A program made the translations under genes and the position numbers. The notes beneath the pieces are model-generated. The model was not told where the DNA came from. It made no database searches and was given only the letters and a program-made list of their open reading frames with translations. From contig NW_027192193.1 in the NCBI RefSeq assembly GCF_041956535.1, positions 574,235 through 638,234 of the forward strand: a DNA stretch of 64,000 bases, read 5' to 3'. Source of the DNA: Calcarisporiella thermophila CBS 279.70. Lineage: Eukaryota; Fungi; Calcarisporiellomycota. Shown here in pieces: positions 1 to 38,872 of the stretch. The stretch's first letter is position 1; every line of letters starts with the position of its first letter.

Positions 1-1
1 G

Positions 2-211
2 GACAGCTCTGCCTGTATAGCGACCCACTGTATTGCCGGGCTTGGGCGCGCCCCCGTGCTAGTTGCTCTGGCCCTCATCGAGAGAGGCATGGCCCCTCTG
101 GATGCGGTCGCGTATCTCCGACGTGTACGCCCTGGATGCATTAACAAGTGGCAGCTGGAGTACATTGAAAACTACAAGAGGAGGAGCAAGTCCAAGTGTG
201 TTATATGTTGA
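2..211 (+). CDS. Protein tyrosine phosphatase type IVA (PRL family), 3' end only
   Basis: Frame 2 reads [30 protein letters not shown]...[11 protein letters not shown]: PRL active-site signature HCxAGLGRAP, polybasic tail and C-terminal CaaX box. Not in the ORF track; the start lies upstream of the window. Confidence 0.9.
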
Positions 212-1038
212 CTTTAATTTTTTTTAGAGTAGCCCCTATTTTAATGGTAATTCCGAAAAAAAAAAGTTTCACCCTATCTTACACGTTATCAGGCTTTATT
301 TCTGGTATTTAATCTTTGGAATCATGGGGAATCATTTGTTTTCTCAGCATTTTTTCTTTTTTCAATCCTCTCTCCTTCCACTTTTCGGCTTTCTCGCTTT
401 ATTTCCTATCTATACACACACACGCAAGTATATATATATATATATTTTTCCTTCTTCTTCTGCTTTTCTCTTTTAAATGCTTTTCGTTGTTCTATTTTAC
501 AAAATGATAATACTATAGACTTGTTTCTTTTGTTGCAATAACGTGTTCCATTAGCAACCCCATGACTTTCTGCTACTGAAGCTTCTCTCCGCGTTGCACC
601 CGGAAGTTTGGCCCCCAGGCTGGTCGGCTGGCCGGTTCCCGCGCCATGCAGAGAGGGGTGGACGGCTGCAGCGGCGATCGGGGTTGGTATGGGCAGCGCC
701 CACGGAGGGCCCAAGATTAGGTTGGAAACTCTATCCCCGCCCCTATTGTGCCATGTGGCATCGGTCGCCAGATATGCACTGCAAAAACACACCCCACCAA
801 CCAGGGCCGGCCTCCTTAATTAAAATTGGTATATGCCACAAATTCGAAACATCGATTTTTCTCCCAACCATCCCATCTAAAAACTCATTAGCACCATTCA
901 TCCCGCCGCCCCTCCCGTTTTCCTCCCCTCAATGCTCTTCCCTCCGCTCGTTTTCTCACTCTAATCCATTCGCATTCTTTCTTTTCCCCCCCAATCATCC
1001 CGGGTCGGATTCTGTCTTTTTCTGGATTGCATGGGACA

Positions 1039-2496
1039 ATGACCCACCTCTCGCCACATCGATCCCCATCATCCGCATCATTAACCGATTGGGCCCCTCG
1101 ACATCCTCGGCGCCGCACATTTTTCACGATCCTCGGTGCATTCATAGTTATCACGGTGTTTTGGCTCCTCTATTCCGTTCAAGACGGGCGGGGACTGATG
1201 CACCTGTGCCAAGAATGTCAGATGCTGAGTGAAGAACAGACGCTGGCGTCGGCCACGCCGGATTACCTCCTGGAGCTCGAGCAGCTGAACGAGAGGCCCG
1301 TACCCCGCAAGAAAGGGGAGAAATACCTAGCCTATCTGTGTAAGTGCACCAGAGATTTGAACTCTGCCGCGGCCTTTGCTCTGCTGATGCTGACGCTCTT
1401 TCCGAATCCATTAGCCTGCTCGGGATTCCACAATCAGCGGGTTGAGCTGGCCAACGCCATGATGCTGGCCCATCTCCTCAATCGCACGCTCTTGGTTCCG
1501 CCCATCACCCTGGGCAAGGTGGTTGGATGGCGGCCGTACGACAAGCTCCTCAGGACCATTTTGCGGCGTGATCGCCTCAAACTCCGCACCTGCACGCCCT
1601 CCTCGCCCAAGCGGCATACGGACGAGTGCGGGCTCGCCAATCGGTACACCTACTTGCACTGGGACTACCTAATGTCGTTCAGAGATCTGAGGGGGATGCT
1701 GAAGATGAAGAAGCGCCACGACCACACCCCCGAGTGGCTGGAGAGGGAGCTGGGGGTTCGGGGTGAGGACGTGTTCTACATCAAGGACAACTCCATGTAT
1801 GAGTACCGCATCCTGGAATCAAACCAAACCCTTGAAAAGTATAGCTACGGCGTGTCCGTCGACGCGCTGCGAAAGGTCCCCCACAGGCTGCTCCACTTCG
1901 GCAGCATGTTTGGCGGGCAGCGGCTTGCGCTGAGCAAGGAGAACGAGGCGCTGTACCAGCGCATCCTCGAGAGCTTCATGGTGACCCACCCCGCCATCGA
2001 GGCCACGGTGGGGGACATCGTGGCCAGGCTGGGAGGGGCCTGGGGGTTTTCGTCGGCCCACGTGCGGGTCGGGGACGGAGCCTTCCGCGAGAACGCCAAG
2101 GACTCCGTCAACCTGATCCTCAGCGAGCTCAAGGAGCACTTCCCCCCGCCCACCCTCCGGCCCCACTCCGCCGCCGATTGTCGGCGCGACGTCCCGTTCC
2201 TGTTCCTCGCCACGGATGCGCGCCACCCGAAAACCAGCGAGGTGCTGCGGGGGTTCTACGAGCAGTATCCCTGCATCGCCACCCTCTCCGACATGTTCGA
2301 CTTGACGCAGTCGCCGCTGTGGGGCCTGCGAAACGAGCTCGACAACATCCCGCTGGGAAAGCTGCTCATCCCCTTTGTCGATGCGCTGGTCGCCGCGAGG
2401 GGCGAGTACTTTGTGCAGACCCATAATTCGACCTTTTCGAGATACGTCATGCTGATCAGGCAAAGATTACGACGGGCTGCTGGGCTGCTTGTCTAA
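1039..2496 (+). CDS. Type II membrane O-fucosyltransferase-like glycosyltransferase (POFUT2/GT68-like)
   Basis: N-terminal TM anchor (FFTILGAFIVITVFWLLY); motifs SGFHNQR, AHVRVGDG, LFLATD, DALVAARGEYFVQTHNSTFS. Probable in-frame 75-nt intron 1340-1414 (GTAAGT...GCTGAC...TTAG). First ATG at 1039. Confidence 0.75.
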   Translation: MTHLSPHRSPSSASLTDWAPRHPRRRTFFTILGAFIVITVFWLLYSVQDGRGLMHLCQECQMLSEEQTLASATPDYLLELEQLNERPVPRKKGEKYLAYLCKCTRDLNSAAAFALLMLTLFPNPLACSGFHNQRVELANAMMLAHLLNRTLLVPPITLGKVVGWRPYDKLLRTILRRDRLKLRTCTPSSPKRHTDECGLANRYTYLHWDYLMSFRDLRGMLKMKKRHDHTPEWLERELGVRGEDVFYIKDNSMYEYRILESNQTLEKYSYGVSVDALRKVPHRLLHFGSMFGGQRLALSKENEALYQRILESFMVTHPAIEATVGDIVARLGGAWGFSSAHVRVGDGAFRENAKDSVNLILSELKEHFPPPTLRPHSAADCRRDVPFLFLATDARHPKTSEVLRGFYEQYPCIATLSDMFDLTQSPLWGLRNELDNIPLGKLLIPFVDALVAARGEYFVQTHNSTFSRYVMLIRQRLRRAAGLLV

Positions 2497-3376
2497 CTCC
2501 TTGACCCCCCCCCCCCCTTCCTCCTTTCTCTCTCTCTTTCTCTCTAATACACACACACTCGCACTCCCCTGCCAACTGAATATTTCTCTGTCACTCATGG
2601 TTAATTTTTCTATTTTCGTAATATAATCGAGCTCCATCCTGGGCCCCGCCCCTTCTCGCGAGGGGAACCGGCCTCCCAAGTAGTTCTATATCACGAAATT
2701 TAGCAAGATTATATTTGTCAACTCCTCCCTAACGTGATGACCTCTCTCCGGCCGTGTAAAATTTCCAAATACTTTCGTTGTCCCAGCCCTCCCCTTCTCA
2801 TATGAATAAAAGGATGTTTTTTCTGAAGGGCCGACGTGGAAAAAAAAGTTTGCTTGGGACGCTAGTGATATTATGATTATTTTTCTTTTTCACTCCCCGA
2901 CACTCCTTTGGAAACATGGAGCAAAATAGGAAGGAAAATAAAAAAAAAAGAGCCCACAAGTCGCAGTCGCGATTACCGGGCTCTCCACCATTTAACCTAA
3001 GGAGGCCTACGCTGGGTCAACAATGCATGGGTCCAAAGCGAAAGAAAAGGGAAAAAAAAGGAAACCGACCGAAGCTATTATGGCTAATATATTCTCGATC
3101 TCCTCTAGGTGGTCCCTTTGGATTTTCTATTCGCGCGATCTGGTCAATAAGCTTTCGCACAAATAGAGAAATGTGGGTTAGGTTGATGGGTCCAAGGGGG
3201 ACCACTTGGCCATAAGACCGAAATAGGGTCAGATATAAAAGGATAGAGGAGTGTCGAGGCTCTTTTGCTTGCTACTTCCTCACCACTTCCATTCATCGAG
3301 TCCTATTTTCTGTGTTCGCTGGTCGAAGCCTAACAGACGCCAATCTTTACCACACTCTCCCCACCCCCTAGACACC

Positions 3377-4299
3377 ATGCTCTTCAAATCGTCGCTTGTG
3401 ACTGCTCTCCTGCTTTCCGCTATCCCCTCGTTTGTCGCGGCTCACGGTCGGATGGTACCCTTTGTTTTTTTTTGGGACCCACCGTTCCACTACCCGGTCC
3501 GTTCCTGGCTAACTTTCGCATGAATAGGTCTCTCCTCCGATTCGCTTGAAGCCTGGCGACCAGAACAACGGCTTCGACTTTGCCAAGGGGCCTAATACGC
3601 GTCAGCCTTGTGGCGGTTTGGTTCGTATCCTTGCCTTCGCGTCCTGCTTGGCCTCTGGGCTCAGTTGGACCCCTCCCCCTCCCCAAAAGAGATCCCACTA
3701 ATCCTCGGCAACTTTTTCCCTCGTAGCCTGCAGGTAACGTCCAGGCCAACTTCCAGCCCGGCGCGCAAATCCCCATTAAGTGGCAGATCACCGCCGCTCA
3801 CAAGGGTCCGTGCTTCATCGAGCTCTCGACGGACGGCCGGGATGGCAACTTCAAGACCCTGAAGACGCTGCCCAACTGTGCCGAGACCAACGGAGACTTC
3901 TCGGACTCTGTCTCGCCAGGCAACGTCCAGTGCGACAAGTGCACGCTTCGATTCCGCTGGCAAGCCAAGCTGACGGGCGAAACCTACATCAACTGCGCCG
4001 ACATCTCGATCGGCGGAAAAGGCGGGGCAGCGCAGCAAGCAGGCTCGTCGGGAGCTAACAATGCAGGCCAAGGGCAAGCTCAGGATCAAGCTCAAGGTCA
4101 AGGCCAAGCCGGCCGGGGACGTCAGCCAGGTCAGGGCCAAAGACAACCTGGACAAAGGCAGCCAGGACAGAGGCAACAGGGACAAAGACTGCCAGGACAG
4201 GGTCAGCGGCAGCAGGGTAATCGTCGGGTGCAAGGCGGCAATCGCCGATTTGGGGCCAACCGCCGGGTGGGTGGCAACCGCCGTGCTGGGCGGAACTAA
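3377..4299 (+). CDS. Secreted His-brace lytic polysaccharide monooxygenase-like protein (AA11-like) with Q/G/R-rich tail
   Basis: Exons 3377-3454, 3528-3620, 3727-4299 join in frame (247 aa). Signal peptide ends ...FVAA with His as residue 23; second His in TAAHKGPC; GETYINCADI motif; TATAAA near 3234. Confidence 0.8.
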
Positions 4300-4666
4300 A
4301 CCCCTCCTCCCCACTCCTCGCCACATGGGAATGCTGGCTTCGTTCCTATCTCCATCTCGCTTTCATTTCCTCTGCACCCCAGCCCCATTTCTCGCTTGAA
4401 GAGTTTATTGTTTGTACTCGGGTTTGAGATAATATATATCAAATTTATTTATAGAAGAAAAGACAATAGAGTGAAAGAGCGTTTTGCGCTCACTGGAATC
4501 AGAAGCGTGGTGTAAAATGGAATAATTTATCTAGTTGACATGGATGAAGTAGAGTATATGTCAAGCGGGCTCGGTTGGGGGGGGGGGAGGAAAAGGAAAA
4601 GAAATGGAAAAGGAAAAAAAAATCAATATATGAAATGAAATCAAATCGATCTATATATCCTAAAGA

Positions 4667-5767
4667 TTACAGCGCCAGCGACCACAGCGCAAGGAGGGTC
4701 AGCGACGTCCAGAGGGCGGCAAATGAGTTGGGCAAGCCTGCAGCCGCGCTCTTTTTGCCCTGCATCGGGCTGCCGAGCGCTCTGGCGACATAGGGCACCC
4801 CGTTCAGCTGCGACACGAGTTTGAGCACCTGGCCGTCGTTGGCCGTGTACCAGTCGACGGCGATGAAGTTGGCGTTTCGCCCAAAGGTTTGCGAGCACGA
4901 GTTCACGTGATCCACCAGCACCTGGCCGTTCGTCACGTTCTGCTGGCCTTGCTGGGGCAGCTCCACCTGCTGGCCGCCGATAGTGAGCGCGCTGTAGATG
5001 AAGTGGTTGATCAAATACATCTTGCCGTTGGGCGACGTTCCGGCGGGGCGGTCGACGGTGCAAGTGAAGGCGTCGTTGCTTGGGACTTGGAAGGGCGTCT
5101 CGAACACGTACTCGAATTCCGGGATCAACCTGGAGCGGGATGGGGGGAGGAGAAATATGCAAGATTCAGTATGCAGGTCCGATCACTCGAGCCACCGCCG
5201 AGCTCACTCTACTTACCAGGGCTGCGAGTCGTCCGTGCTATCGCCGATGAAGTTCACGATTCGCTTTCCCTGCTTCACCAGGTCGCCCAGCGTCGGCCAC
5301 GGGGCCCCGGGGGTGTGGGAGTACACCATGTCCATCACCCCTGCGCTCTGGTACACCTGGGCAAATGTGCTGGCGGGGAACTTGTCGAAGTTCTCCCAGA
5401 AGATGGTGACCACCTCCTGCGGGTTGGCCTGCAGGAAGGTCTTGATGTTTTTCAGCGTGTTGCCCGCACTGCCTGCGTCGAGCAGGTCGCAGCTTGTATG
5501 GCACAGCTGGATCACGTTGGCCTCTTTGCCCGCGGGCGGCTTGTGGGCATCGAGCATGAGCCCGCGAATTCCATCCTTGAGCTGGGTGGGGATGTCGAAT
5601 TGCTGGTTGGCGGCGGTGTTGAAGCCGGATGCAAAGGAATTGTGCGTGGTCGCGTAGGCGAGCTGGTTGTAGGGCTTGGAGCAGAGATCCGGCGACCCGT
5701 TGCAGGCCAAGGACGGCGTGGCCAGGAGGAGGGCGAATGCAAGGGCGAGGGTGCGGGAATGCATCAT
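4667..5767 (-). CDS. Secreted, probably GPI-anchored PLC-like phosphodiesterase (PI-PLC X-domain fold)
   Basis: Signal peptide; CNGSPDLCSKPYNQL..TTHNS, QLKDGIRGLMLDAH, LCHTSC, NPQEVVTIFWEN, YLINHF, NFIAVDW; hydrophobic C-terminus. One intron at 5130-5216. Confidence 0.85.
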
Positions 5768-6152
5768 GGCGAGCTCTGGAATGCTAGCAATGGAGGAGGG
5801 CGGGAGTGGGAGGAGGGGGCGCGGGAGCAAGAGAGGGCGGCGATGGAAGGCTAAGAATTCTGAGGAGAGGCTCCCGCTGTTCCATACAATTGAGGAAATG
5901 GATCGAATTGTGGCCTGGGCTCCGATTTAAATTTCCCAACACTGCTTCTGACTGGAAGCCGTCCGTAAAGGGTGGAACAGCTTCTTGACCCTGTTTCAGA
6001 AGCCTTAGGCTCGCCCGTCTTGGCTGCCCGGCTCCGGTCCACGGCCTGGGGAAGAGCCTAGGGGCTGCAGCAACACAAAACCGAGCGCTTGGGGTGGGGG
6101 AGCAGGGGGACCATGACGCTGCATCAAGGTTGAAACCGCCGCGATCGATGAC

Positions 6153-6168
6153 GGGCTAAATTTAGCCC
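6153..6168. promoter_or_regulatory. Perfect 16-bp palindrome containing a MEF2/Rlm1-type CTA(W)4TAG site
   Basis: GGGCTAAATTTAGCCC lies in the divergent intergenic region between the PLC-like gene and the C2H2 gene. Confidence 0.4.
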
Positions 6169-6714
6169 AGCTTATCAAGGCGTCCCGCACATCCTCGATC
6201 GAAGCGTGCCAGCCTCGCTGTGCCGCAGTGCGCCTCCTCAGCCGCCCGCCACGGTGGTGGTCTCGGGCGCAGGGGGCGTGCTCGACCCGCCCGTGCCTGC
6301 GCCGCTCTCGTGCGCGCCCCCGCCGGCCAGCGCTCCCGCCCCCGCGCGGTACTCGAAAAGGACCGGTTTAGGGTTGACTTGCTTGCTAGCAAGCCGATGC
6401 CATTACATCATGCGCCCCCCGAGATCCTTGGACCCGCCAGCGTTACACGGCCGGAGGTGATGGGTCACTGTTTGAAATTCCCTAAGAAGCATCTAAGCTT
6501 TTCCGCTCGAAAGCAGAGCTGATCACCCCTGGCCGGTTTCGCTTCCCCACCAGGCGGTGAGCATTGCCAAAAGCTTGGCCAAATTTTCGTCGGCATTTCA
6601 AATCGCGACGGTTGTGGGAGAGCGGTGCATGGCAGATCTGTCGTCGATGGAGTGGGTCTATTTTTAACTTTTATCCATCCCGCTGCTGCCCCTCTTTGCT
6701 TTTTCCCTCTCCCG

Positions 6715-6752
6715 CTCTCCTCTCCTCTCCTCTCCTCTCCTCTCCTCTCCTC
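6715..6752. repeat. (CTCTC)n pentanucleotide microsatellite
   Basis: About 7 perfect copies upstream of the C2H2 gene. Confidence 0.85.
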
Positions 6753-6998
6753 GCCCGCCTCTCCCCTCCTCGCCCGCCCTCGCCCGGGGGATATAGACCA
6801 GCCAATCGCCACGCCTAATGCGCATGCCTCATCCCTAATCTGCCCTGCCTGTATATTCTTATTTATCTCAACCCGAATCCCACCCTCCAGTTTATTTATC
6901 CTCGCTAGTATTGCTCCTCCTCCTACTGTTTAGCGTATCTTCTCCTCCCCCTCCCCCTCCCCCTCCCCGGCAATTCGACCTCCAGCTATCACTCCCCG

Positions 6999-8249
6999 AT
7001 GCAACAGACCCACGTCGCCCTCCCATCCATTCGCACCCTGCTCGCCGAGCCTGTTCCTGGTAAATGGGGTTGCATGCCCACGCCCCCTCCCTTTCCCTAA
7101 TCGTATACTTTTGTAGGGCCTCGGGCCTCGGGCCTTCATCAACGGCACGTCTCATCCCCGTTTTCATCATTTCCCGATCGTGATCCCCATGCGCCTCGCC
7201 GCGGACACATGAGATCAGGCAGCGATGGCTTTGCCCCCTCCTTTACCTTTCCTCCCCGAGAGCCATCACAGGTCCCATCCCCTTCTGCCGCGCCCGCCTC
7301 TCAGCAGTCGCCCATGTTCAGCCCGCACATCGGAAAGCTCACCCATGCCCTGGCTCACACGAAGCTTGGGGATCCCCCCGAAAATCCGCTTGGCACCATG
7401 GAACCAGACCTGGCCAAAATGAGGGGCGTAGAGGTGTTCAACAGAGACCTGACCCTCCCAGCGCTCCCTCAGACCGGCCCGGCCCGCGGCTGGCCTCCCG
7501 CCCAGAATAATGGGTTCCCCCACGCCAATTCCCCCTCGCGACTAGCGGACCCCAAACATTCCACCTCCTCATACCACCTGAGCCCCCCGAACGCATTCCC
7601 CCCGTCCTCTCCCCTTGAAAAAGCTCGGCTGCGGCCCCACTCCCACCATCGATCCGTCTCGGACCTCACGCACCCATATTCCCCCCACCGCGAGCTCGCC
7701 CCCCTGCATGCCCTCAATCCTGCCCCACCCGCCTCCTCGGCCTCTTCCGCAAGCGACGGCCCCCTCCCTCCGCGCTTACACCACCCCCACCAACATAGAC
7801 GTGCCGCTTCGCACACGAGCATCGACAGCCTGATCAACCGCGAGTCGGGCGCAGAGCGGATCCTTCCCCCGCTGCCCGTCCCTCCCGCGCTGCAGGAGAC
7901 GAGCGGGAGCCCGGGGCCCAAGCCAAGCTCCCAGGCCCCCTCGGCCTCGCCGGCACACTCTCCTCCCCGTGCGCCTTCCTCCACCTCGCCGCTGGCAACC
8001 TCGCCCGCCCTGACCCCCGCAGCCAACCCTCCACCGCCGCCCAGCCATGGGTCGCAGAACCGCTACCAGTGCCCCTACTGTCCAAAGCGCTTCTCCCGGC
8101 CGAGCTCATTAAAAATTCACACCTACTCGCACACCGGCGAGCGCCCTTTTGTCTGCTCGGTGGAGGGCTGTGGCCGCTCCTTCTCCGTCCAAAGCAATCT
8201 GAGACGTCACATGCGAGTGCACCGGACTGGGCGGTTGAAAAAGGAGTAA
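6999..8249 (+). CDS. C2H2 zinc-finger transcription factor (two C-terminal fingers, Nrg1-like)
   Basis: [53 protein letters not shown]. Upstream exon 6999-7059 ([15 protein letters not shown]) splices via intron 7060-7116 in frame with the 7209 ORF. Confidence 0.9.
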
Positions 8250-8611
8250 ATATCTGTCATGTTCTTCTCTTCCCCTCAGTGTAAATTATAGTTCCCGTCC
8301 AAAGCTAATATACAACTTTCTCCCCTTCCCCCTCCCACAATTTTCCATGTCCATCTCTTTCTACCCTCTCGCTTCGAACGAGCTCTCACTGAAAAGTCGC
8401 CAGCACTTTTATTTTTTTTTTTTTTTTACCACAAACTAATTCGTAAAAGACTCGTATACACAAATTGGATGGGGCTGCGTGAAAGAAGGATGCAGCCATC
8501 CTCGATCTCCAAAAGATCCATGTCTATTACAATGGAAGTTCGGTCGGGTCAATAACCCTTTTATCGTGCAAGGAAAAGGGGCCTTTTACTCTGGACAAGA
8601 ATTGATCCTCG

Positions 8612-9970
8612 TTAGTGGAAGGGGAGTGTGGGAAGAGCCTCCTCTGCTCTGGCCTGCATTTCGGGGGTGAAGTCCTGCTTCCAATCGCCGACATTGCCCT
8701 TTCTGAAAAACATGGCATTGTCGATGTTAGGGTTGAGAAGCGAGCTCCGCTTGGACGACCCCGAGTTAGCCATGGACTCGAAGCTGCATCTCTGAATAAT
8801 GTCGTCGATCTCCTTGTCCGTGAAATCAGGCCGGCCCAGGAATGCCGCGAGCCCCCTCACGGTCCTCGCCGTGTCATTCTTTAGGCTCTCAAAGGTGAGG
8901 AAGTGTATATTGGCGGAATCTCTCGCGCCCCAGTAGCTTTGCACATGGTCCTTGAAGGGGCCGGCAAAAAAGGCGCCGTTGCAATAATCGTCGAACATCC
9001 CCTCCATCGAGAAGTCGGGTTTGCTCCACGCGAGATTCTCGTTTTCCGAAGCTCTCTTGACAAAGTGAAAGTAGGAGATGAATGTGTCCCGCGGATCGCG
9101 TGAGACGTAGACGAATTTGCACCCGGACGCTTTGATGGAGTCGGGCAGGATGTGATACGGCAGGTGCGTTTGTAAGAAGCGAGGCGAGGGGAGCTCCTCT
9201 TCGCTCGGGATCTGGCCCTGCGCGGAGGGAGCGCGTGGAAACTCGATGGGTGGGGCCAACTCGTGCGGATTATACTGGTCGAATATGTTGGCCTTCTGCC
9301 GCCCATAGTTGAGAATGGTGTAGATGATCGCTTTGGTCCAGGTGGTTCCACTCTTGGCGATCGAGGCCAGGAGAATATCATCTGGCCGAGCTCGATAGTG
9401 CTTCCGAAGCTCTTTGATGCGTAGGAGAAAGAGCTCTGGGAACCATGTGTTCATGTACTTGACCAGGATGCCCCCATTGTGGGTTTGGTACTCTTCTATC
9501 CTATCGACGTACAGAGCAACCCCAAGCATGTAGGCGGCAGGATCTCTACCTCTGCCCCCCTTTAGCGCGCTGGAGAGCTCCTCCTGGAAATCCTTGTCCT
9601 TTGACAGGATGCCGACGGTCTCCAACACGTCCTTCTTTCCCGCGCACATTAGAGGAGAGGGGGGCTTCTGGAAGTTGGGGAATCGAGCTTGGAGCGCCTT
9701 GATGATGCCGCGTAGATGGCGGCTCACCGTCTCCTTGGCTTGTGGGCCTATGGGCCTCTGCTTGGGGAATTCGTCCGGCTTCCGGAGCGAGTAGGCGGTG
9801 CAGAGCGTGTGAATATCCTCGATCACCTCGTCCACATTCATACTCAGCAGTTCCAGAATCAGCTGAAGCCGCCGAACGGAATCCTCCTTCACGTCCGCCG
9901 GGGTTTTGTTTGTCTTGGTCAGCTGTAGCGCCTTATCAAGCGTGGACAGAGCCGAGTCTTTAGCGTCCAT
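8612..9970 (-). CDS. PAPS-dependent cytosolic-type sulfotransferase (SULT/SOT family) with N-terminal extension
   Basis: Intronless 452 aa; 5'-PSB loop RPDDILLASIAKSGTTW, catalytic His in PRFLQTHLP, 3'-PB motif YVSRDPRDTFISYFHF, C-terminal FFRKGNVGDWK. Confidence 0.93.
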   Translation of the reverse strand: MDAKDSALSTLDKALQLTKTNKTPADVKEDSVRRLQLILELLSMNVDEVIEDIHTLCTAYSLRKPDEFPKQRPIGPQAKETVSRHLRGIIKALQARFPNFQKPPSPLMCAGKKDVLETVGILSKDKDFQEELSSALKGGRGRDPAAYMLGVALYVDRIEEYQTHNGGILVKYMNTWFPELFLLRIKELRKHYRARPDDILLASIAKSGTTWTKAIIYTILNYGRQKANIFDQYNPHELAPPIEFPRAPSAQGQIPSEEELPSPRFLQTHLPYHILPDSIKASGCKFVYVSRDPRDTFISYFHFVKRASENENLAWSKPDFSMEGMFDDYCNGAFFAGPFKDHVQSYWGARDSANIHFLTFESLKNDTARTVRGLAAFLGRPDFTDKEIDDIIQRCSFESMANSGSSKRSSLLNPNIDNAMFFRKGNVGDWKQDFTPEMQARAEEALPTLPFH

Positions 9971-10407
9971 GGTGCAATCCTCGATACGAATTTCTCGGAT
10001 TGGCCGTGAAGGGTCTACTTATCTCACATGAACTGTGGCAAATTTTCTTTCGCGAGCTTTATGGAACTCGGAAGTATAGACGAGAAACATGCCTGGCTTT
10101 GTGATATGAATCGATTGGGTAGAAATACGATACGAATGCCATTTTCTACCGATTGGGTAGAAAATATCTTTGTAGAGTGCATTGGTTTTTATCCGGGGCC
10201 ACCAAGATACACCGTCCGTAGATCCTTAATGCTTCCTTGAAACGTAAACATGTTTAAATTGCTAAGGGATGAAAATTTACATTTTTGGAAATGATTGCCC
10301 ATTTGGGATGATGGCCTTGGTTGGATATAAATATACAGGCCATGGTGCCTTGGAAGTATCTCTTCACAACCTCCTTTTATCCCCACTCACTTTCCAACCA
10401 CGCGCCT
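9971..10407. promoter_or_regulatory. Bidirectional promoter of the sulfotransferase and P450
   Basis: Head-to-head genes; 14-bp direct repeat CGATTGGGTAGAAA (10112, 10150); 10-bp inverted repeat 10141-10165; several ATTGG (reverse CCAAT); TATAAATA at 10326. Confidence 0.6.
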
Positions 10408-11886
10408 ATGCTGTTCTATGCCCTGAGTCTCTATGTGGGGGCTGCCGTAGTTTATGGGCTCAGCCGATGGGGCTTTCGGAAGCATTCTCCACGGCACCGG
10501 GAAGTTCCTCTTGTGAGGGGGTCATGGCCGATCGTAGGCCACGGCTACGAGTTCTCCAGAGACCCGTTGGGATTCATCCGCAAAGCATGTCGCAAGTATG
10601 GCAGGGTCTTCAAGATCCGCCTGTTTAGAAGGGAGATGGTGGTCGTCTGCGATAAAAGCTTGATCCACCCCTACTTCAGAATGAAGGAGGAGGACATGTC
10701 GCTTTACGACATCCTCGTGCAATTGGGCTTTGGCGATGCGTTCTCCGATGATGCCAGCATGTTTTACACTTTTATCCGAATCATGCAAGGCACCGTGGGA
10801 GTCAAGCCGGATGAGTTTGCTCCCAAGATCCTGGACGGGGCGCAGCGGATGGTGAGGAGGATGCGCGAGAGAGTAGGGGCGGGAGGCGCGGATGTCATCG
10901 AAGAGATGGTGCGGTTTATCTCCTCCACGAGTGCGATGTGCTTTCTTGCGGCGGAGCTCGACGAGCAGACGCTCGCATTACATCGAAAGTTTTCGGGACT
11001 GCTGAACAAGATCATCAGCCTAAGCTACTTTCTCCCCTCCAGGGCACTTCGTCCCATCTTCGTCCCTAGACTCTCCACCTATCGAAAGCTGATCACGAAG
11101 CGCTTCCTCCCCGAGATCCAAAAGTACCGTGCCGACCCCCAAAAGAGCGACTCCCTTCTGCTCAGGAAGGCGGTGGACTACGGCTCCGATGGAAAGGTTC
11201 TCACCGACCAGGATATCGGGGACCTGATCGTCTGTCTGCTCTACGTCAGCACCGAAAACACGGCATACGGGCTCTCGGAATCTCTCCTCGACCTTGCTCG
11301 CCACCCTGAGGTTTGGCATAGAGTTCGGGAAGAAAGCAAGGTTTTCACCAGGATATACCAGGACATTAGCGATGCGGAGCACATCTTTGATTCCAAGCTG
11401 ATCAAATCCTGCATTATGGAGTCTGCCCGCATGAACGCCCATCTCTTCTCCATCCATCGAAGGCCGGCGAAGCCACTCACCCTGGGGAGCTACTACGTCG
11501 GCCAAGTCGACTCCGTCGCCCTATGCACGTCGATGTTAATGGTGCACAACCAGGCCTCCGATTGCATTTTCCAACAGGCGCTTCAATACGATCCTTTTCG
11601 CTATCACGAACCGAGTCGTGACAAATATTCCTCGACCAATGTTATGACCTGGGGTGCGGGCGTGCACCTCTGCCCCGGGAAACAGTTCGCCCTTTACGAA
11701 ATCACCGCAGGAATAGCAATGATAGCAGCGAACTTTGAGGAACTAAGGGTCCAGCATGTCGGATCCCCTAACTACTTTTCCTCGTCCGCGTTTGCCTGGC
11801 GCCCGAGTCGTCTCGCCATGATCCCGACCAAAATCCACACTCCGACGGATCTCACATCACCAGCAGCGGAGAAGACTCAAGTATAG
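10408..11886 (+). CDS. Cytochrome P450, membrane-anchored, CYP51/CYP7-clan-like with atypical I-helix
   Basis: Intronless; N-terminal TM, PLVRGSWPIVGH, I-helix LLYVSTENT, ExxR (ESAR), DPFRY, heme motif WGAGVHLCPG. ATG at 10408 chosen because it begins the TM anchor downstream of the TATA box; an in-frame ATG at 10342 is an alternative. Confidence 0.93.
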   Translation: MLFYALSLYVGAAVVYGLSRWGFRKHSPRHREVPLVRGSWPIVGHGYEFSRDPLGFIRKACRKYGRVFKIRLFRREMVVVCDKSLIHPYFRMKEEDMSLYDILVQLGFGDAFSDDASMFYTFIRIMQGTVGVKPDEFAPKILDGAQRMVRRMRERVGAGGADVIEEMVRFISSTSAMCFLAAELDEQTLALHRKFSGLLNKIISLSYFLPSRALRPIFVPRLSTYRKLITKRFLPEIQKYRADPQKSDSLLLRKAVDYGSDGKVLTDQDIGDLIVCLLYVSTENTAYGLSESLLDLARHPEVWHRVREESKVFTRIYQDISDAEHIFDSKLIKSCIMESARMNAHLFSIHRRPAKPLTLGSYYVGQVDSVALCTSMLMVHNQASDCIFQQALQYDPFRYHEPSRDKYSSTNVMTWGAGVHLCPGKQFALYEITAGIAMIAANFEELRVQHVGSPNYFSSSAFAWRPSRLAMIPTKIHTPTDLTSPAAEKTQV

Positions 11887-12311
11887 AATATAATCACCCA
11901 ACTGGCTGCTTTTGTAAAATACGCTTTATTCACACCCTTTGGTTATAATATGCATGGGGATATGGGTGTGTGGCTAGATAATAAACAGTTTAAATCCGAG
12001 TAAAACATCGATCTAGGGGACAAAATAGAATAGAATCCAAAAAAAAAAATAGAATGAGCCATTTCACGAAATACCACACACGGAATTCGCGGTCAGCCAG
12101 GCCTCATCTAGCATAGTTTGGCGGTACATACAGGAGAGTGGGTGGTTAGAGGGTTTGGCGTTGACTGGGTAGTCACTTCTCGATAAAATAGGTGGTATAC
12201 CAGAAAGAACACAAAATAGAGGGGCATGTACAAGTTACAAATAGTTTTTGTGCGGTTGAGCGTGCATATATGCGTAGCAGTTAAATAATAATGGAGGAGG
12301 AAAGAGTACAG

Positions 12312-26004: not shown

Positions 26005-29000
26005 CTATAGCGGCCACATCTTCTCGGTCTTGTAGATCACGCCATCATTTCTGACTAGCAATACCGGCACCTTCCATTTTAAATTCTCGACCTCCGGTGG
26101 GACCCAGCATGTCATGACATCGCTACACCTTTGTTCGGTTTGCACACTGGGCACTTCGCCGAACCACACGCTCAGTCCAGGGGTGAAATTCTTTCCGTAC
26201 ACGGTGATCCTTCGCCCTTCATGCTCCTCGGAGTTCGCGAGAGAGTGGCCGCTATTGTTAGCCGAGGGGTGTTGTTGGAATGCGGACAGTTGCTCGCTAG
26301 ACGTGGTCAATAGCTGCATCACGACGGGTATTGGCGTGACGGGTATAGCCAGGGGAGATAACAGTTGACTTAGTGGGGAAGTGTTGCCGGAGACATTGCT
26401 ATGTGGGGCGAAAAACTTGAAAAATGCTGAGTCGGTGCCGACAATGGTCCACACGGCGGCATCGGTGATGTCCTCTGTCCAGCCTTCCAGTGGAGCATCG
26501 CTCGTGGCCAGGGGTTGCTGGCTATTTTGGGACATTTCAATCATGGACTCTAAACGGTGTAAATTCGCCTCTACCCCACTAGTGCTATTTACACGTTGCC
26601 GATTTTTGGAAAGCAGCTTTCCAGACGCAGGCGAGGACGACAGTGAACCCGAGTGCTGCGGAGGGGCATTATTGGATGGCCGGCCAATCGGGATCGGAGC
26701 AGTACGTCGTCTACGTGAGGTCTTACTGTTTGCGTCGTCTCCATTCCTAGGTTCGGAGGCAGGGCGTCCCGCACCGGATCCCTCGGATGTAGGTGAGGGC
26801 TTGCGCGAGGGCGGCGACACTTGGAGAGTCTTACGGGAACCAGGCACCGCATGGATACAGCTCACGCCTTCAGGTAAACAGGCAAGATACTCGCCAGGTT
26901 GGTTGAAATCGCCGTGATTGAAACTCGGATCGCGAATCTCGAACGCCACCTTTTGTAGCTGGGAAACAGGGTCACCAATTGCTACCATCCAATGGCCATC
27001 CGTTAGCATTGAACTCAAAACTATTTTTCTCAGAGCAATCCATTTTACCTTCTTCGCCTCCCAGTCCTCCCAACTGGGTTATCCCGTCCCCCTCCATCTG
27101 CACGTCTTCGCTGTGAGCAGCCCCACCTCCGACCACCCAGTTCCCTTTGTCTACCTTGCGTATCACCATAATGGGACTCACCTTCCCGGTAGCCAAACAC
27201 TGCAAAACCACCGGTTGATTGTAGTGGATAGGTATTGGATTATGATTGCCTTTGGCTGGCCGATAGGCTAGAGGCGGGCGCGATATGTGGGCAGGAACAC
27301 TGGGATTGCTGTCACAAGTGCTAAGATTTTCGTGCAGTTGTGACATTTGGCCGTTGGAGAAGCAAGATTGGGCCTGATCGGGACTGTTTTTGCTCAAATC
27401 CACCAGCCAAATGATGTATGCATCCCAGCTATCCGACCGGCTAACAAAAGAGATCTGTTCGTCCTGTTGGTGCTTCTCACTTTCTCCAGAGCTCCAGGGC
27501 CAGTAAGTAGGCAACTTCTGCGAGTCACGGGAACTGCCGAGGTATTTGGTTGAGACGGTCTGAGAGCGAAGACGATTGAATAGCGATATCGTACTTCCGT
27601 GATGAATGCATACTAATGGAGGAGGGAGAGGCACGAACCAAACATAAAATCGGGGGGAAAAAATAAGTGGAATTCCAACTGGCGACAGAAAGCATATCAA
27701 CTTACGATCCATGTTCTTCAAGCTCTGCCTCTTCTTGCTCGGTTTCGAAATGACCTTAATTGGCTTGCTTGCGAAATCCCCTAAATGCGATTCCTCAGCG
27801 TCTGCCCTTACAACGACCTCCACCTTCCTTCGCTTTTCATCTGCATCATTAATATGCAGCTGTTTAGACACGCACTGGCCCAGAAGAGTGGGCTCACTCG
27901 AGCTCACACCCGGTTTTGCCTTTGTGCCTGCCTTGGTGAACCACTCCAGTGAGCCTTGCTGTTGGATGACTTCCCCCGTAATACTCACCGTTAGCCTCGG
28001 TTGCGAGGACTGACCGGCTTGCCCATCGTTCTCCAGCGACCGATTCCAGGAAGGTCCGAGGAGGAGCGTGGTGGGCGGGGGGGTCAAGAAGCGTTTCTCT
28101 GTCCCATAAGATTTTTGCGCAACTTTTGGAGTCGCAATAAGAATGCATTTCTCGCCGATTTCGCCTGGATTTGGGCTCGCAAGATAGTAGCGGACTATTT
28201 CCTTTAACAGGGGCATGCTCAGGGCTGCCCCGTCTCTTGCCGGCGAAAGACCCGCTAAAGAGGAAGCAAAGGGTTCTTCTCGTTTTGAATCGGCGGGGCT
28301 TAGCTCTTGCATCGATGAAGGAGTGTCATAGGCTGCATCGAGGGGCTGTGTTGTTAGGTGGGTTGAAGAATTATCAGAAAGGAACTGATCCGACGGTAAA
28401 CCATCGACTTTAAAATGCATATCAGAAAGCCTCTGTAAACACTCGGACACCGGCTTCAAATCCGCTGCATACTGCCTCATCGCAGCACCCATATCGCATT
28501 CTGCAGAATTACACCCGTCATTTCCCGCCGGCACGATTATATCTGATGTAGATGAAATATTCGGGAGAGACCCGAGTGTGTCAAGGAAAGAAGAGGACAA
28601 GTAAGCAGGGGAATCTGAAGTTGTCGTAGAGGGTAAATGCGATTGGCCGGCAAACTGATTCCTGTCCAGTCCAAACTGCTCGAAACCATCAAGCAAGTTC
28701 CTCTGTACCGATTCTGAGAGGCCCTCCTCGGTCCTCGTGTGAGAAGGGTTCTGGTGATGTGAATAGAGCAATTGCGACGTTTTCAGAGGAGATCCGTTAG
28801 GATATTCGGGAACAAGAATGTAGTTGCTCCCAACTTCCGTAAATGATGTTGGCTGTGAGCTGGGAAGATCTTGGAAGTTTTTGAGGGTATCCATAAATGA
28901 CTCATCGAACATGATAGAGTCCAAGTTGAGTTCGTTGGAGGTCGGTGGTAGATGGGTTTGTTCCCTCGACACGAATGCATCACCATTATCATCGTCCAGA

Positions 29001-29218
29001 AGATAAGCCATGGAAGTATCCCATGAATGTAGGTCGTCCGCATGTGATCCATTGCTTGTGTCATTTGAGGAGGATTTTACTGTAGATTCCTTCGGAGTAG
29101 AGGGCGTGGACAGCACGTACTCGGACCAGGCGTCATTGGACCAGAGGGATGTCTGCCCTTGGGAATACTCTGCTGTTGCACCCGACTTGCTGTCGTGTGG
29201 AAATATGGGCAGCTCCAT
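26005..29218 (-). CDS. CSL (CBF1/Su(H)/LAG-1) family transcription factor, fungal Cbf11/Cbf12-like
   Basis: KVAQKSYGTEKRFLTPPP, KQLHINDADEK, SKPIKVISKPSKKRQS, LFNRLRSQTVSTKYL, GDPVSQLQKVAF, WTIVGTD, IPT-like end (VYGKNF..VWFG, LLVRNDGVIY). Introns at 27613-27705 and ~26983-27048. Confidence 0.92.
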
Positions 29219-30414
29219 CGCTAGGATTGTCAATGTAGGGTGAAATAGACAAACACAATCGACGAGTTGAAGTAGAGACGGGAGGTGATATTATTTTTTT
29301 GGTGGGGAAAACGGAATCGTACAAATATTTGTTGACCTCAGTCAAAAACCTAAATATACTTAGGTTAGTAAAAGCAGTTCGCTATGCTCCATGCTTTGAT
29401 CCTCGACTATTAGTAATGGAAATGTGGTGTATTTCGTTCAACCTTGGGCTTTTCTCCCGATAAATTCAATGTCAGCTCAAGACACAGCTTGTCATTTCTT
29501 CTGGACATAAGTTACGTCTGAGATTGTCGCCTCCATTTCTGCCTTACCGCGTTAGCGAAGGACTCCATGGGACGCCTCAAGGTAATTTAATCGCCACTAA
29601 ATGAGCATGGCTGATAAAAGGCTAAATCTGCGAAATCAAAGAAATGCTCAAATTCCACCCACCCATGGTTCATGGGAATTGAAGTAGTGAAAAAGCAAGT
29701 GTAGTTCTATTATTCAGTTATTTATATGGTACAAAAAGATTATTTTAAGATATTTAAGGCAGGGGAATGCAATGAGAAAATGGAACATAGATTTAGCATT
29801 TATTATTCGAGTATATACAATCCTCACAAACCGAAACTCTTCAGGTGGTTGGATGTTGCGCATGGTCTCCATTGTAACAGATGAGATTATTTACCCGGAT
29901 CAGCAACCCTAATTTCTCCAGAACTCTCCAAAAGATGTTGAAACATTGCAATACCTTCGTCAGCTTACCTAAGAACCTCTATCCTGACAAAGATAGATAC
30001 TTCGGCTCAATGCATGCCCGAGAGGCGCCCTCCTATATTTGCCGAAGATCTAGAGGAAATTCGGCCTTAGCTGAGCTATTCACTGAGGGAGAGGAGCCTC
30101 CACACAAATAACTTGATCGATGGGTAGACTCTAATATTCCCCCAATGAGTAATTTTGGTTTTCCTAATGGGGGCCCTGCCTACACATCATTTTAGAAATT
30201 CCTATTTCATATCGTCCGAAAATGGGTTTGTTATATAATTCACTCATATTTCACCTCCCAAAGTCATCACACCTTTTCTGCTCCATTCCTTCTGCATCCT
30301 TCCATACTAACTAGAAACTAGCCTTGAAACAATCGCGCTCATTATCTTCCAACCAGTCGGTCATTATCTGCTCCTCTCGCTCTACCACTCCTCTCTTAAA
30401 TTGAAATTGCTGAT

Positions 30415-38280: not shown

Positions 38281-38872
38281 GATTTAAATATAGTGGAGAG
38301 TAATAAAAGCAAAAGAGCATATACGATTAAGGAAATCAACGAAAAATTGCCGTGTGCTGTGACGTAGATGGTACGTGATCTAGGTGGAATTGTATTTATT
38401 CTCTGACTCACAACCCTCTTCCTCCTTTCATTTTGCAAGTCCTCATCCTAATATTTCATTTCTCTTCCTGAGATTGAGCCCCCCACTTTCTGACTCAAGT
38501 GAATTTATATACTAATTATATTTCCTTTTGAAAGCCTGATTCCCTTGTTTCTACTATTATTTAATTTCACTGTTTTTATTATTCTGATTCTGACAACTCC
38601 ATTGCTCTACTTCTAGAACCACAAAACGCCAGAGCTCATTGGCACATTTAGTTGCTTCAATGCATAATTGGTCCCGCATCACCAAGTACGAAAGGAATCC
38701 TACCGTCCGCACGCTCGCTCTTTATCACATCGAATCTCCGACCCTTCTCTCTTTAATCTAAAGAATCACTTAAGAAATTACAATCGAATAGGTAATTGCC
38801 CCCACCAAAGTTTAATATATAGCCTCTTTTATTTTACATGGATGCTTATTTCATTTGAATCGTTTCCAGTTT

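What the first reader, a model, noticed from the sequence alone, without database searches (positions are those of the whole stretch)
8612..11886. Head-to-head sulfotransferase + atypical P450: candidate two-gene hydroxylate-and-sulfate cassette
Seen: two intronless enzymes, a complete SULT/SOT and a membrane-anchored P450, are transcribed divergently from a ~440 bp spacer in an otherwise intron-rich genome, at the edge of the GC-rich block. Established: P450 hydroxylation followed by PAPS-dependent sulfation is the phase I/II and steroid-sulfate logic of animals and plants, and cytosolic SULT-fold enzymes are sparsely distributed in fungi. Inference: a co-regulated mini-cluster that makes or detoxifies a sulfated sterol, lipid or phenolic, possibly assembled from horizontally acquired genes.
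Basis: partly seen in the sequence, partly recalled or inferred. Interest (0 to 1): 0.82.

Follow-up and report, generated by a model that had tools for sequence, protein, structure and literature searches.

The report
Fungal giant-virus-type P450 beside plant-like sulfotransferase
In the thermophilic early-diverging fungus Calcarisporiella thermophila, an intact sulfotransferase most like plant enzymes and an intact P450 from a family otherwise seen almost only in giant viruses sit head-to-head; they may form a hydroxylate-then-sulfate pair, but no data here show that they work together.

Summary
The sulfotransferase (SULT) is an uninterrupted ORF at 8612-9970(-), 452 aa. The P450 is at 10342-11886(+), 514 aa as annotated. 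They diverge from a 371-bp spacer (437 bp if the third ATG is the start).

A 99% Mak16 match identifies the genome as Calcarisporiella thermophila.

**SULT:** all PAPS-binding and catalytic motifs are present. It is 35-44% identical to its best hits; the named ones are all seed-plant SOTs. It branches beside them and lies outside the two published (Ascomycota-only) fungal SULT clusters. About 150 N-terminal residues have no detectable homolog.

**P450:** it belongs to the Mimivirus/Moumouvirus/Klosneuvirus-type family (39-48% identity, 100% clade support, CYP51-like fold, family-wide Asn at the I-helix Thr position). It lacks the family's usual C-terminal 2OG-oxygenase-like domain.

**Ancestry and linkage:** both genes are single copy with no fungal ortholog found. 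Their nearest kin are different groups. No SULT lies near any P450 relative (44 loci) and no such P450 near any viral SULT-like gene (6 loci). So the pair was probably assembled in this lineage.

**Limits:** GC3 is within the native range, other intronless P450s exist, and the P450 tree cannot tell virus-to-cell from cell-to-virus transfer. No RNA run was listed, so co-regulation and substrate remain inference.

First-stage readers of this scan had already noted both genes separately.

The parts
8612..9970 (-). Sulfotransferase gene, 452 codons plus stop, no intron, single copy in the genome
   Evidence: ORF. It equals database protein P0001. It is the only full PF00685 match in the 28-Mb genome.
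8639..9385 (-). Sulfotransfer_1 catalytic domain (aa 196-444). It holds the 5'-PSB loop K206/G208-W211, catalytic His269, the 3'-PB residues R291/D295/S299, and the RKGxxGDW motif R423/G425/G428.
   Evidence: Pfam E 2e-60. Best solved relatives are Arabidopsis SOT16, SOT12-type and SOT18, E 1e-47 to 1e-50. The invariant columns of alignment A2 are all kept.
9530..9970 (-). Orphan N-terminal extension of the SULT (about aa 1-147), predicted mostly helical
   Evidence: No Pfam family. None of the best 150 of 6770 HMMER hits begins before query residue 149. No usable Atlas feature hit, and structural matches have TM of 0.40 or less. Its codon-position GC (0.61/0.40/0.74) matches the catalytic domain (0.52/0.40/0.73), so it looks coding.
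9971..10341 (.). Shared divergent spacer, 371 bp, 41% GC; candidate bidirectional promoter
   Evidence: Sequence and GC. Its extent depends on the P450 start codon (10342 as annotated, 10408 as an alternative).
10112..10165 (.). Exact 14-nt direct repeat (10112-10125 and 10150-10163) overlapping a 10-nt perfect palindrome (10141-10150 / 10156-10165); candidate cis element
   Evidence: The exact word occurs only at these two places in the genome. One-mismatch copies are no more frequent than the reversed control, 10 against 14.
10342..11886 (+). P450 gene (514 codons from the annotated ATG; the open frame starts at 10321), no intron, single copy. A stand-alone member of the giant-virus-type P450 family.
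   Evidence: The model has pLDDT 84.7 and pTM 0.83, and its nearest solved folds are CYP51s (TM 0.65-0.82, 17-22% identity).
10402..10473 (+). N-terminal hydrophobic helix (ORF residues 28-51), the likely ER membrane anchor
   Evidence: Helix 28-51 in the AlphaFold model. The family members also have a hydrophobic N-terminus.
11254..11262 (+). I-helix Glu312-Asn313-Thr314: Asn sits where most P450s have the oxygen-activating Thr
   Evidence: E312, N313 and T314 are invariant in all 20 aligned family members. Asn aligns with the Thr of the E-T-T motif in PDB 9wat.
11650..11679 (+). Heme-binding loop W444-G453 with the Cys451 thiolate ligand. The ExxR motif (E367, R370) lies upstream at 11419-11430.
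   Evidence: Invariant columns W444, G447, H449, C451, P452, G453, E367 and R370.

Best explanation
Shown: two intact, single-copy, intronless enzyme genes of non-fungal affinity lie head-to-head in Calcarisporiella thermophila. One is an ER-anchored P450 with a CYP51-like fold. It belongs to the family known from Mimivirus, Moumouvirus, Cotonvirus and klosneuvirus-type genomes, but lacks the C-terminal 2OG-Fe(II)-oxygenase-like domain that most members carry. The other is a PAPS-dependent sulfotransferase with every cofactor-binding and catalytic motif. It is closest to seed-plant SOTs and carries an orphan helical extension of about 150 residues.

Inferred: the two genes entered or survived in this lineage separately, long enough ago to have native codon composition, and were brought together here. 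They now share a bidirectional promoter of about 370 bp. They would act as a two-step module. The P450, with electrons from the host's NADPH-P450 reductase, would hydroxylate a lipophilic small molecule; a sterol- or terpenoid-like substrate is the best guess from its CYP51/CYP7-clan kinship. The SULT would then O-sulfonate a hydroxyl group using PAPS from the fungal sulfate-assimilation pathway, giving a soluble sulfate ester.

The enzyme identities are near certain. The functional coupling and the substrate class are inference only.
For: Identity of the enzymes.

Foreign or orphan ancestry:
- P450: the best hits at 39-48% identity are giant-virus and metagenome proteins, mostly around 700 aa with PF13532. 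The next tier drops to bacterial P450s at 25%. The family clade has 100% support with the window inside it.
- SULT: exhaustive HMMER finds nothing above about 44% identity, and all named top hits are plants. The window groups with seed-plant SOTs at 100% support against animals.
- Published fungal SULTs are all Ascomycota and only 14-28% identical to plant or human enzymes (PMC11677658).

Coupling:
- The genome's single SULT has one of about 45-50 P450 loci as its immediate, divergently transcribed neighbour. This is roughly a 1% chance event.
- The short AT-rich spacer holds a significant exact 14-nt repeat with a palindrome.
- Both genes have the same GC3.

Integration in the fungal chromosome: the locus lies about 580 kb into a 1.38-Mb contig, between intron-bearing fungal genes.
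Against: There is no expression data of any kind: no RNA run was listed.

The pairing is not conserved anywhere. No SULT was found in the 44 loci around P450 relatives, and no family P450 in the 6 viral loci with SULT-like genes.

No core biosynthetic enzyme was seen among the long ORFs of the surrounding 16 kb. Divergent neighbours are common in compact fungal genomes. The promoter repeat is not part of a wider regulon. Nothing ties the SULT to the P450's product; its plant relatives act on steroids, flavonoids, hydroxyjasmonate and desulfoglucosinolates. The finding was picked after the fact from many windows, which weakens the 1% figure.
Confidence: 0.42

Rival explanations
1. Incidental neighbours. 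Both genes are functional lineage-specific accessory enzymes that landed or survived in the same GC-rich accessory block, but they act in unrelated pathways. Examples would be the SULT in xenobiotic or phenolic conjugation and the P450 in lipid or sterol modification.
For: No conserved linkage was found in any relative. Their nearest kin are different groups, which argues for independent origins. The 1-12 kb block holds other genes without recognisable families and has a distinct composition. No cluster core enzyme lies nearby.
Against: A P450 next to the genome's only SULT is about a 1% event by chance. The pair is head-to-head over a short spacer with a non-random repeat. Oxidation followed by sulfation is an established biochemical logic.
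Confidence: 0.4
2. Co-transfer. The two genes arrived together from one donor, such as a giant virus or an unsampled eukaryote that already carried the pair.
For: Both are intronless, adjacent and compositionally alike. Giant-virus MAGs do encode SULT-fold proteins. Family P450s also occur in other cellular assemblies named by their sources: Folsomia candida (10.8-Mb scaffold) and Dinothrombium tinctorium.
Against: Viral SULT-like genes are only 22-28% identical to this SULT, against 35-44% for plant SOTs, and none has the P450 nearby. No P450 relative has a SULT within about 10 kb. No NCLDV capsid gene and no trace of the family's C-terminal domain was found in the genome, although both negative searches lacked a positive control.
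Confidence: 0.08
3. Vertical relics. Both genes descend from ancient eukaryotic lineages that were lost in all other sampled fungi. The giant viruses captured their P450 from a cellular lineage like this one.
For: Reduced-set trees put the window at or near the base of the P450 family: SH-aLRT 87 with LG+G4 and 75 with LG+C20. The SULT is sister to seed-plant SOTs rather than nested inside them. Codon composition is native-like. This fungal lineage is isolated and poorly sampled.
Against: It needs very many independent losses across fungi. The 78-row mixture-model tree instead places the window inside a 65-member subclade (SH-aLRT 89). The window's long branch together with a very long outgroup branch invites long-branch attraction towards the base, and the tree tool warned of this.
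Confidence: 0.1

Closest known systems
Giant-virus P450s of the Mimivirus / Moumouvirus / Cotonvirus / klosneuvirus type. Sources annotate them 'putative lanosterol 14-alpha demethylase'. From my recollection of Lamb et al. 2019 PNAS they are the CYP5253 family; that paper was not readable here.
   Same: 39-48% identity over the whole P450 domain. All 58 family-invariant columns are kept, including the Glu-Asn-Thr I-helix, the heme loop and the C-terminal Y-F-S motif. The N-terminal membrane helix is shared. The window falls inside the 100%-supported family clade.
   Different: It is encoded on a 1.38-Mb fungal chromosome contig, not in a virus. It lacks the fused C-terminal PF13532-like domain, and no remnant of that domain was found in the window or genome. 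It is GC3-rich (0.69), whereas many related contigs have 24-31% GC. It has a long terminal branch.
Plant cytosolic sulfotransferases (SOTs), e.g. Arabidopsis SOT16/17/18 (desulfoglucosinolate) and SOT12-type steroid/flavonoid SOTs; PDB 8k9y, 1q44, 5mek
   Same: Same fold family with the same PAPS-binding and catalytic residues. Highest identity of any group (35-44%). It groups with seed-plant SOTs at 100% support against animal SULTs.
   Different: It is fungal. It branches outside the sampled seed-plant SOTs (SH-aLRT 82). It has an orphan N-terminal extension of about 150 residues and a shorter C-terminus. Its substrate is unknown.
Published fungal aryl sulfotransferases: FgSULT1 of Fusarium graminearum, and HwSULT and AsSULT (the Hortaea and Aspergillus clusters)
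   Same: They are PF00685, PAPS-dependent enzymes in fungi (PMC7690957, PMC11677658).
   Different: Those clusters are reported as Ascomycota-only and as 14-28% identical to plant and human enzymes. One cluster sits among bacterial enzymes and the other near algal ones. None appeared among the 120 named best hits of this SULT. The window's enzyme would therefore be a third, plant-like fungal lineage.
CYP51 sterol 14-alpha-demethylases
   Same: They are the best solved-structure matches by sequence (E 3e-26) and by fold (TM 0.65-0.82).
   Different: Only 17-22% identity. In the CYP51 alignments the I-helix reads ...stent... where CYP51 has ...gqhts..., and the B'-region FG motif context differs. 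It is not a CYP51 ortholog.
Phase I / phase II (oxidise then sulfate) metabolism of animals and plants, and fungal tailoring-enzyme gene pairs
   Same: A P450 next to a PAPS-dependent sulfotransferase under a shared divergent promoter fits that logic.
   Different: No substrate, product, co-expression or conserved linkage is known. No core biosynthetic gene lies nearby.

Membership tests
Cytosolic sulfotransferase (Pfam PF00685, SULT/SOT) | Sulfotransfer_1 domain above the curated cut-off | tested here: met
   204.6 bits against a cut-off of 22, aa 196-444
Cytosolic sulfotransferase (Pfam PF00685, SULT/SOT) | 5'-phosphosulfate-binding loop (K-x-G-T-T-W) | tested here: met
   K206 and G208-W211 fall in invariant columns of A2
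Cytosolic sulfotransferase (Pfam PF00685, SULT/SOT) | Catalytic histidine | tested here: met
   His269 falls in the invariant column H114 of A2
Cytosolic sulfotransferase (Pfam PF00685, SULT/SOT) | 3'-phosphate-binding residues (R...D...S) and the C-terminal RKGxxGDW motif | tested here: met
   R291, D295, S299, R423, G425 and G428 are all invariant columns
Cytosolic sulfotransferase (Pfam PF00685, SULT/SOT) | PAPS-dependent sulfonation activity | not testable with these tools
   Needs an enzyme assay
Plant SOT clade | Nested within plant SOTs in a phylogeny | tested here: inconclusive
   The window plus seed-plant SOTs have 100% support against animals, but the window is sister to all 31 sampled plant sequences (SH-aLRT 82). 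No algal, protist, bacterial or fungal SULTs were in the tree.
Cytochrome P450 (PF00067) | P450 domain above cut-off, Cys-ligand heme loop and ExxR motif | tested here: met
   114.6 bits against a cut-off of 22.8. C451 in the G-x-H-x-C-P-G loop, and E367/R370.
Cytochrome P450 (PF00067) | I-helix acid-alcohol pair (Asp/Glu-Thr) | tested here: not met
   Glu312-Asn313: Asn aligns with the conserved Thr. This holds in all 20 aligned family members. From memory, the CYP7/CYP8/CYP39 sterol hydroxylases also carry Asn here and are true monooxygenases; that is a lead, not checked here.
Giant-virus-type P450 family (CYP5253-like) | Sequence membership: inside the family clade, about 40% identity or more to named viral members | tested here: met
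   40-41% to the Mimivirus, Moumouvirus and Cotonvirus proteins, 39% to the Hyperionvirus and Harvfovirus ones, and up to 48% to metagenomic members. The family clade has 100% support.
Giant-virus-type P450 family (CYP5253-like) | C-terminal fused 2OG-Fe(II)-oxygenase-like domain (PF13532) | tested here: not met
   The ORF stops about 20 residues after the P450 domain. No remnant was found in the window by tblastn. One viral C-terminal domain used as query found nothing in the genome (no positive control). Seven of the 69 family rows in the tree are likewise stand-alone.
Giant-virus-type P450 family (CYP5253-like) | [quoted passage not shown] | tested here: not met
   The flanking genes are fungal and intron-bearing. 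No NCLDV capsid match was found in the genome, but the control genomes were also silent.
CYP51 sterol 14-alpha-demethylase | CYP51 signature I-helix (His-Thr-Ser) and orthology-level identity | tested here: not met
   17-22% identity, with a different I-helix in the CYP51 alignments
Fungal metabolic gene cluster | Linkage conserved in other genomes | tested here: not met
   No SULT in the 44 loci around P450 relatives and no family P450 in the 6 viral SULT loci. No close relative of this fungus was available to test.
Fungal metabolic gene cluster | Core biosynthetic enzyme or transporter nearby | tested here: not met
   The long ORFs at 1-16 kb give only O-FucT, a C2H2 factor, Mak16 and proteins with no family. 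Short-exon genes were not modelled.
Fungal metabolic gene cluster | Co-expression of the members | not testable with these tools
   No RNA run was listed for this stretch

The most novel reading that the evidence does not exclude
The Calcarisporiella P450, together with the stand-alone tandem copies on an unidentified, probably eukaryotic compost-metagenome contig, represents the cellular lineage from which Mimiviridae-type viruses took their P450 before fusing it to a 2OG-oxygenase-like domain. Equally new would be the reverse: the first trace of giant-virus gene flow into a non-zoosporic fungus. In this fungus the gene was recruited next to a plant-like sulfotransferase with a new N-terminal domain, to make a sulfated sterol-like metabolite that no other known fungus makes.
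Probability: 0.15. Interest if true: 0.75.

Novelty: new variant of a known kind. Interest (0 to 1): 0.55.

Why it matters
The origin and function of giant-virus P450s are open questions. Lamb and colleagues state that they could not derive the giant-virus P450s from any known host (PMC11814380, citing their 2019 PNAS paper). An intact, chromosomally integrated, stand-alone member in a culturable thermophilic fungus offers a cellular system in which that family's substrate could be found.

Giant viruses have so far been tied only to zoosporic fungi (PMC13533422). A family member in a non-zoosporic lineage therefore bears on virus-fungus gene flow in either direction.

The SULT would be a third, plant-like lineage of fungal sulfotransferases and the first outside Ascomycota. 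Coming from a thermophile, it could be a useful biocatalyst for sulfation.

If the pair is a real module, it is a minimal case of a pathway assembled from genes of two different foreign affinities.

Tried and rejected
**Expression.** The look-up of sequencing runs listed no RNA run.

**Single-protein scans of viral contigs.** These found nothing. The alignment-based scan found one viral P450 locus and 32 metagenome loci.

**Remnant of the viral C-terminal domain.** None was found in the window. One query found none in the genome; there was no positive control, so this is weak.

**NCLDV capsid (PF04451) in the genome.** No match, but the controls were silent too, so it is uninformative.

**SULT N-terminal extension.**
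- Pfam gave only a sub-threshold TAL-repeat hit.
- Exhaustive HMMER gave no coverage before residue 149 among the best 150 hits.
- The Atlas gave only generic helical-bundle matches at TM 0.40 or less.
- The single-sequence AlphaFold model of the SULT was unusable, with pLDDT 35.

**Foreign composition as evidence of transfer.** Rejected: GC3 of both genes lies within the range of native P450s.

**Intronlessness as evidence of transfer.** Rejected: at least three other P450 genes are also single long ORFs.

**Promoter repeat as a regulon motif.** Rejected: it is not enriched elsewhere in the genome. The bacterial-type promoter and terminator scan is irrelevant to a fungus.

**Polarity of the P450 tree.** The AU test on the 78-row set did not finish in three runs. 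The reduced trees disagree with the large one on whether the window is basal or nested. The direction of transfer is left open.

**Is the compost organism with the closest P450s a relative of this fungus?** Two of its flanking proteins find nothing in this genome, so it is probably unrelated. Its identity is unknown.

**Literature.** The term 'CYP5253' is absent from the searchable library, and the 2019 PNAS paper is not held. That family name rests on my memory.


Full report
**1. What is there**

The window holds two long uninterrupted ORFs in divergent orientation.
- The first is at 8612-9970(-), 452 aa. It carries a Sulfotransfer_1 domain at aa 196-444 (PF00685, E 2e-60).
- The second is at 10321-11886(+). 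It carries a P450 domain (PF00067, E 7e-33).

The database gene models are 452 aa and 514 aa. The 514-aa model starts at the ATG at 10342.

Both proteins align end to end with relatives without intron-like breaks. The Mak16 gene 3.5 kb downstream has five exons in 327 codons. The region 1-12 kb is GC-rich (52-66%) against about 42% beyond.

**2. Organism**

The Mak16 exon matches a Calcarisporiella thermophila protein at 99% identity. The next-best Mak16 hits (Piptocephalis, Basidiobolus, Coemansia and others) are only about 50-70% identical. The fungus therefore has no close sequenced relative in the databases.

The genome is 28.2 Mb in 116 contigs, and the window lies about 580 kb into contig C3. 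Other window genes are ordinary opisthokont or fungal ones: CSL/LAG1, GATA, C2H2, BRCT, Kelch and O-FucT. This is integrated chromosomal DNA, not contamination.

**3. The sulfotransferase**

All family-invariant residues are present:
- the 5'-PSB loop, K206 and G208-W211;
- the catalytic His269;
- the 3'-PB residues R291, D295 and S299;
- the RKGxxGDW motif, R423, G425 and G428.

Its best solved relatives are Arabidopsis SOT16, an SOT12-type steroid/flavonol SOT, and SOT18 (E 1e-47 to 1e-50).

The word-index search of 5.8 billion proteins found nothing closer than 34-39% identity. The exhaustive HMMER search of 1.84 billion representatives found nothing above about 44%. Every named top hit is a seed plant, conifers included.

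In a 49-row tree the window groups with 31 plant SOTs at 100% support against 17 animal SULTs. It is sister to all the plant sequences rather than nested among them (SH-aLRT 82). That tree contains no algal, protist, bacterial or Ascomycota SULTs, so the true sister group is unknown.

The literature reports 174 fungal PF00685 proteins, all from Ascomycota. They form two clusters that are 14-28% identical to plant and human enzymes (PMC11677658). This gene belongs to neither cluster.

It is the only full PF00685 gene in the genome.

About the first 150 residues have no homolog:
- no Pfam family;
- none of the best 150 of 6770 HMMER hits starts before query residue 149;
- no meaningful Atlas match.

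The codon-position GC pattern of the extension is the same as in the catalytic domain, so it is probably translated. Only transcript ends could prove that.

**4. The P450**

Its nearest relatives, at 39-48% identity over the whole P450 domain, are proteins of Mimivirus, Moumouvirus, Cotonvirus, Hyperionvirus and Harvfovirus, together with many metagenome contigs. Most are about 700 aa with a C-terminal PF13532 (2OG-Fe(II)-oxygenase-like) domain. After this family the hits fall to bacterial P450s at 25% identity.

A contig carrying one of the closest fused members is 26% GC, gene-dense and full of ORFans and ankyrin proteins. That is giant-virus-like.

The window protein keeps all 58 invariant columns of a 20-member alignment. 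These include the heme loop with Cys451, ExxR (E367, R370), and an I-helix Glu312-Asn313-Thr314. In that I-helix the Asn aligns with the conserved oxygen-activating Thr of canonical P450s. This 'atypical' trait is therefore family-wide.

An alignment-based AlphaFold model is confident (pLDDT 84.7, pTM 0.83). It shows an N-terminal helix at residues 28-51. Its closest solved folds are CYP51s (TM 0.65-0.82) at only 17-22% identity.

Language-model features place it nearest the vertebrate CYP39/CYP7-type sterol hydroxylases. It is not a CYP51 ortholog.

It lacks the family's C-terminal domain. No remnant exists in the window, and one query found none in the genome.

It is single copy.

**5. Where the P450 sits in its family**

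The 78-row mixture-model tree supports the family at 100%. It places the window inside a 65-member subclade (SH-aLRT 89) on an unresolved backbone, with a long terminal branch of 1.28 against a median of 0.6.

The two 31-row trees instead place it at or near the base: SH-aLRT 87 under LG+G4 and 75 under LG+C20. Next come two stand-alone tandem copies from compost metagenomes, and then the fused forms.

The outgroup branch is very long, and the tree tool warned of long-branch effects. The AU test on the full set never finished. I therefore cannot say whether the gene went from virus to fungus or whether cellular stand-alone forms are ancestral.

The compost contigs have low coding density and carry fragments of WD40, RabGAP and TPR genes, so they are probably eukaryotic. 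Two of their flanking proteins find nothing in this genome. Fused copies also occur in assemblies of the soil arthropods Folsomia candida (10.8-Mb scaffold) and Dinothrombium tinctorium. The family has therefore entered cellular genomes before.

**6. Is the pair a unit?**

For:
- This is the genome's single SULT. Its immediate, head-to-head neighbour is one of about 45-50 P450 loci. That is roughly a 1% chance event if one assumes about 10,000 genes.
- The 41%-GC spacer holds an exact 14-nt direct repeat with an overlapping perfect palindrome. About 6e-4 such repeats are expected by chance in 550 bp (my estimate).
- Both genes share GC3 of about 0.7.

Against:
- No SULT homolog occurs in the 44 loci around P450 relatives.
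- Giant-virus MAGs do carry SULT-fold genes, but these are only 22-28% identical and none has the P450 nearby.
- The two genes' nearest kin are different groups, so co-transfer from a known kind of donor is unlikely.
- No core biosynthetic gene was seen nearby.
- The promoter repeat is unique to this site.
- No RNA run was listed.
- GC3 of 0.69-0.73 lies within the native P450 range of 0.43-0.77, and at least three other P450s are single long ORFs. Neither composition nor intronlessness marks the pair as recent arrivals.

**7. Verdict**

The most informative result is about ancestry. The locus holds a fungal, stand-alone member of the giant-virus-type P450 family next to a plant-SOT-like sulfotransferase with an orphan N-terminal domain. 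Both lack fungal orthologs, and they were evidently brought together in this lineage.

The hydroxylate-then-sulfate module is a reasonable working model, at about 0.4. It is about as likely as incidental adjacency, and it is entirely untested. The substrate guess (sterol- or terpenoid-like) rests only on the P450's clan kinship and on the steroid-accepting plant SOT relatives.

First-stage readers of this scan had already noted both genes separately. Their points were checked here and hold: the plant-like SULT with an unexplained N-terminus, the Asn in place of the I-helix Thr, the giant-virus P450 kinship, the promoter repeat and the compositional step.

Noticed in passing
L008:3692-10020 (compost metagenome contig ERZ795104 NODE_783; the same arrangement occurs in L009-L012): The two closest P450 relatives (47% and 45% identity) are stand-alone tandem genes. 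An upstream antisense fragment is 54% identical to residues 417-494, so it looks like a pseudogene piece. The contig has 37% GC and sparse genes, and is probably eukaryotic. Two of its flanking proteins find nothing in the window's genome.
   Followed up: partly
L005 (G000:C43:20220-23753): The strongest PF00067 match in the genome lies directly beside an ORF that matches NADPH-cytochrome P450 reductase (E 5e-43). This is probably a self-sufficient P450-reductase fusion of the fatty-acid-hydroxylase type.
   Followed up: partly
G000:C19:633660-652790: An array of at least four P450 genes, all with long uninterrupted frames (560-625 aa). Part of the fetched stretch (L063) reads as withheld N.
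   Followed up: partly
G000:C20:149357-149512 (L047): A second, short PF00685 match (26.8 bits, profile positions 133-184) in a 258-aa open frame. It may be a divergent or partial sulfotransferase.
   Followed up: no
window 1-12000: In the GC-rich block, GC3 is 0.69-0.79 for four of its long ORFs (O-FucT-like, C2H2, SULT, P450) and 0.58 for the ORF at 4889-5851. Genes further along the window have 0.41-0.54. Several ORFs in the block have no Pfam family.
   Followed up: partly
window 8413-8431: A run of about 19 T lies in the 360-bp tail-to-tail gap between the C2H2 factor gene (ends 8249) and the SULT gene (ends 8612).
   Followed up: no
window 26972-29233 and 38855-39811: A CSL/LAG1-type DNA-binding protein (PF09271, E 1e-43) and a double-GATA zinc-finger ORF. 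CSL factors are unevenly distributed in fungi.
   Followed up: no
P0132 and P0159: Full-length fused P450/2OG-oxygenase-like genes of the giant-virus type occur in assemblies of the springtail Folsomia candida (10.8-Mb scaffold) and the mite Dinothrombium tinctorium. These are likely independent entries of this family into soil-animal genomes, or contaminants.
   Followed up: no
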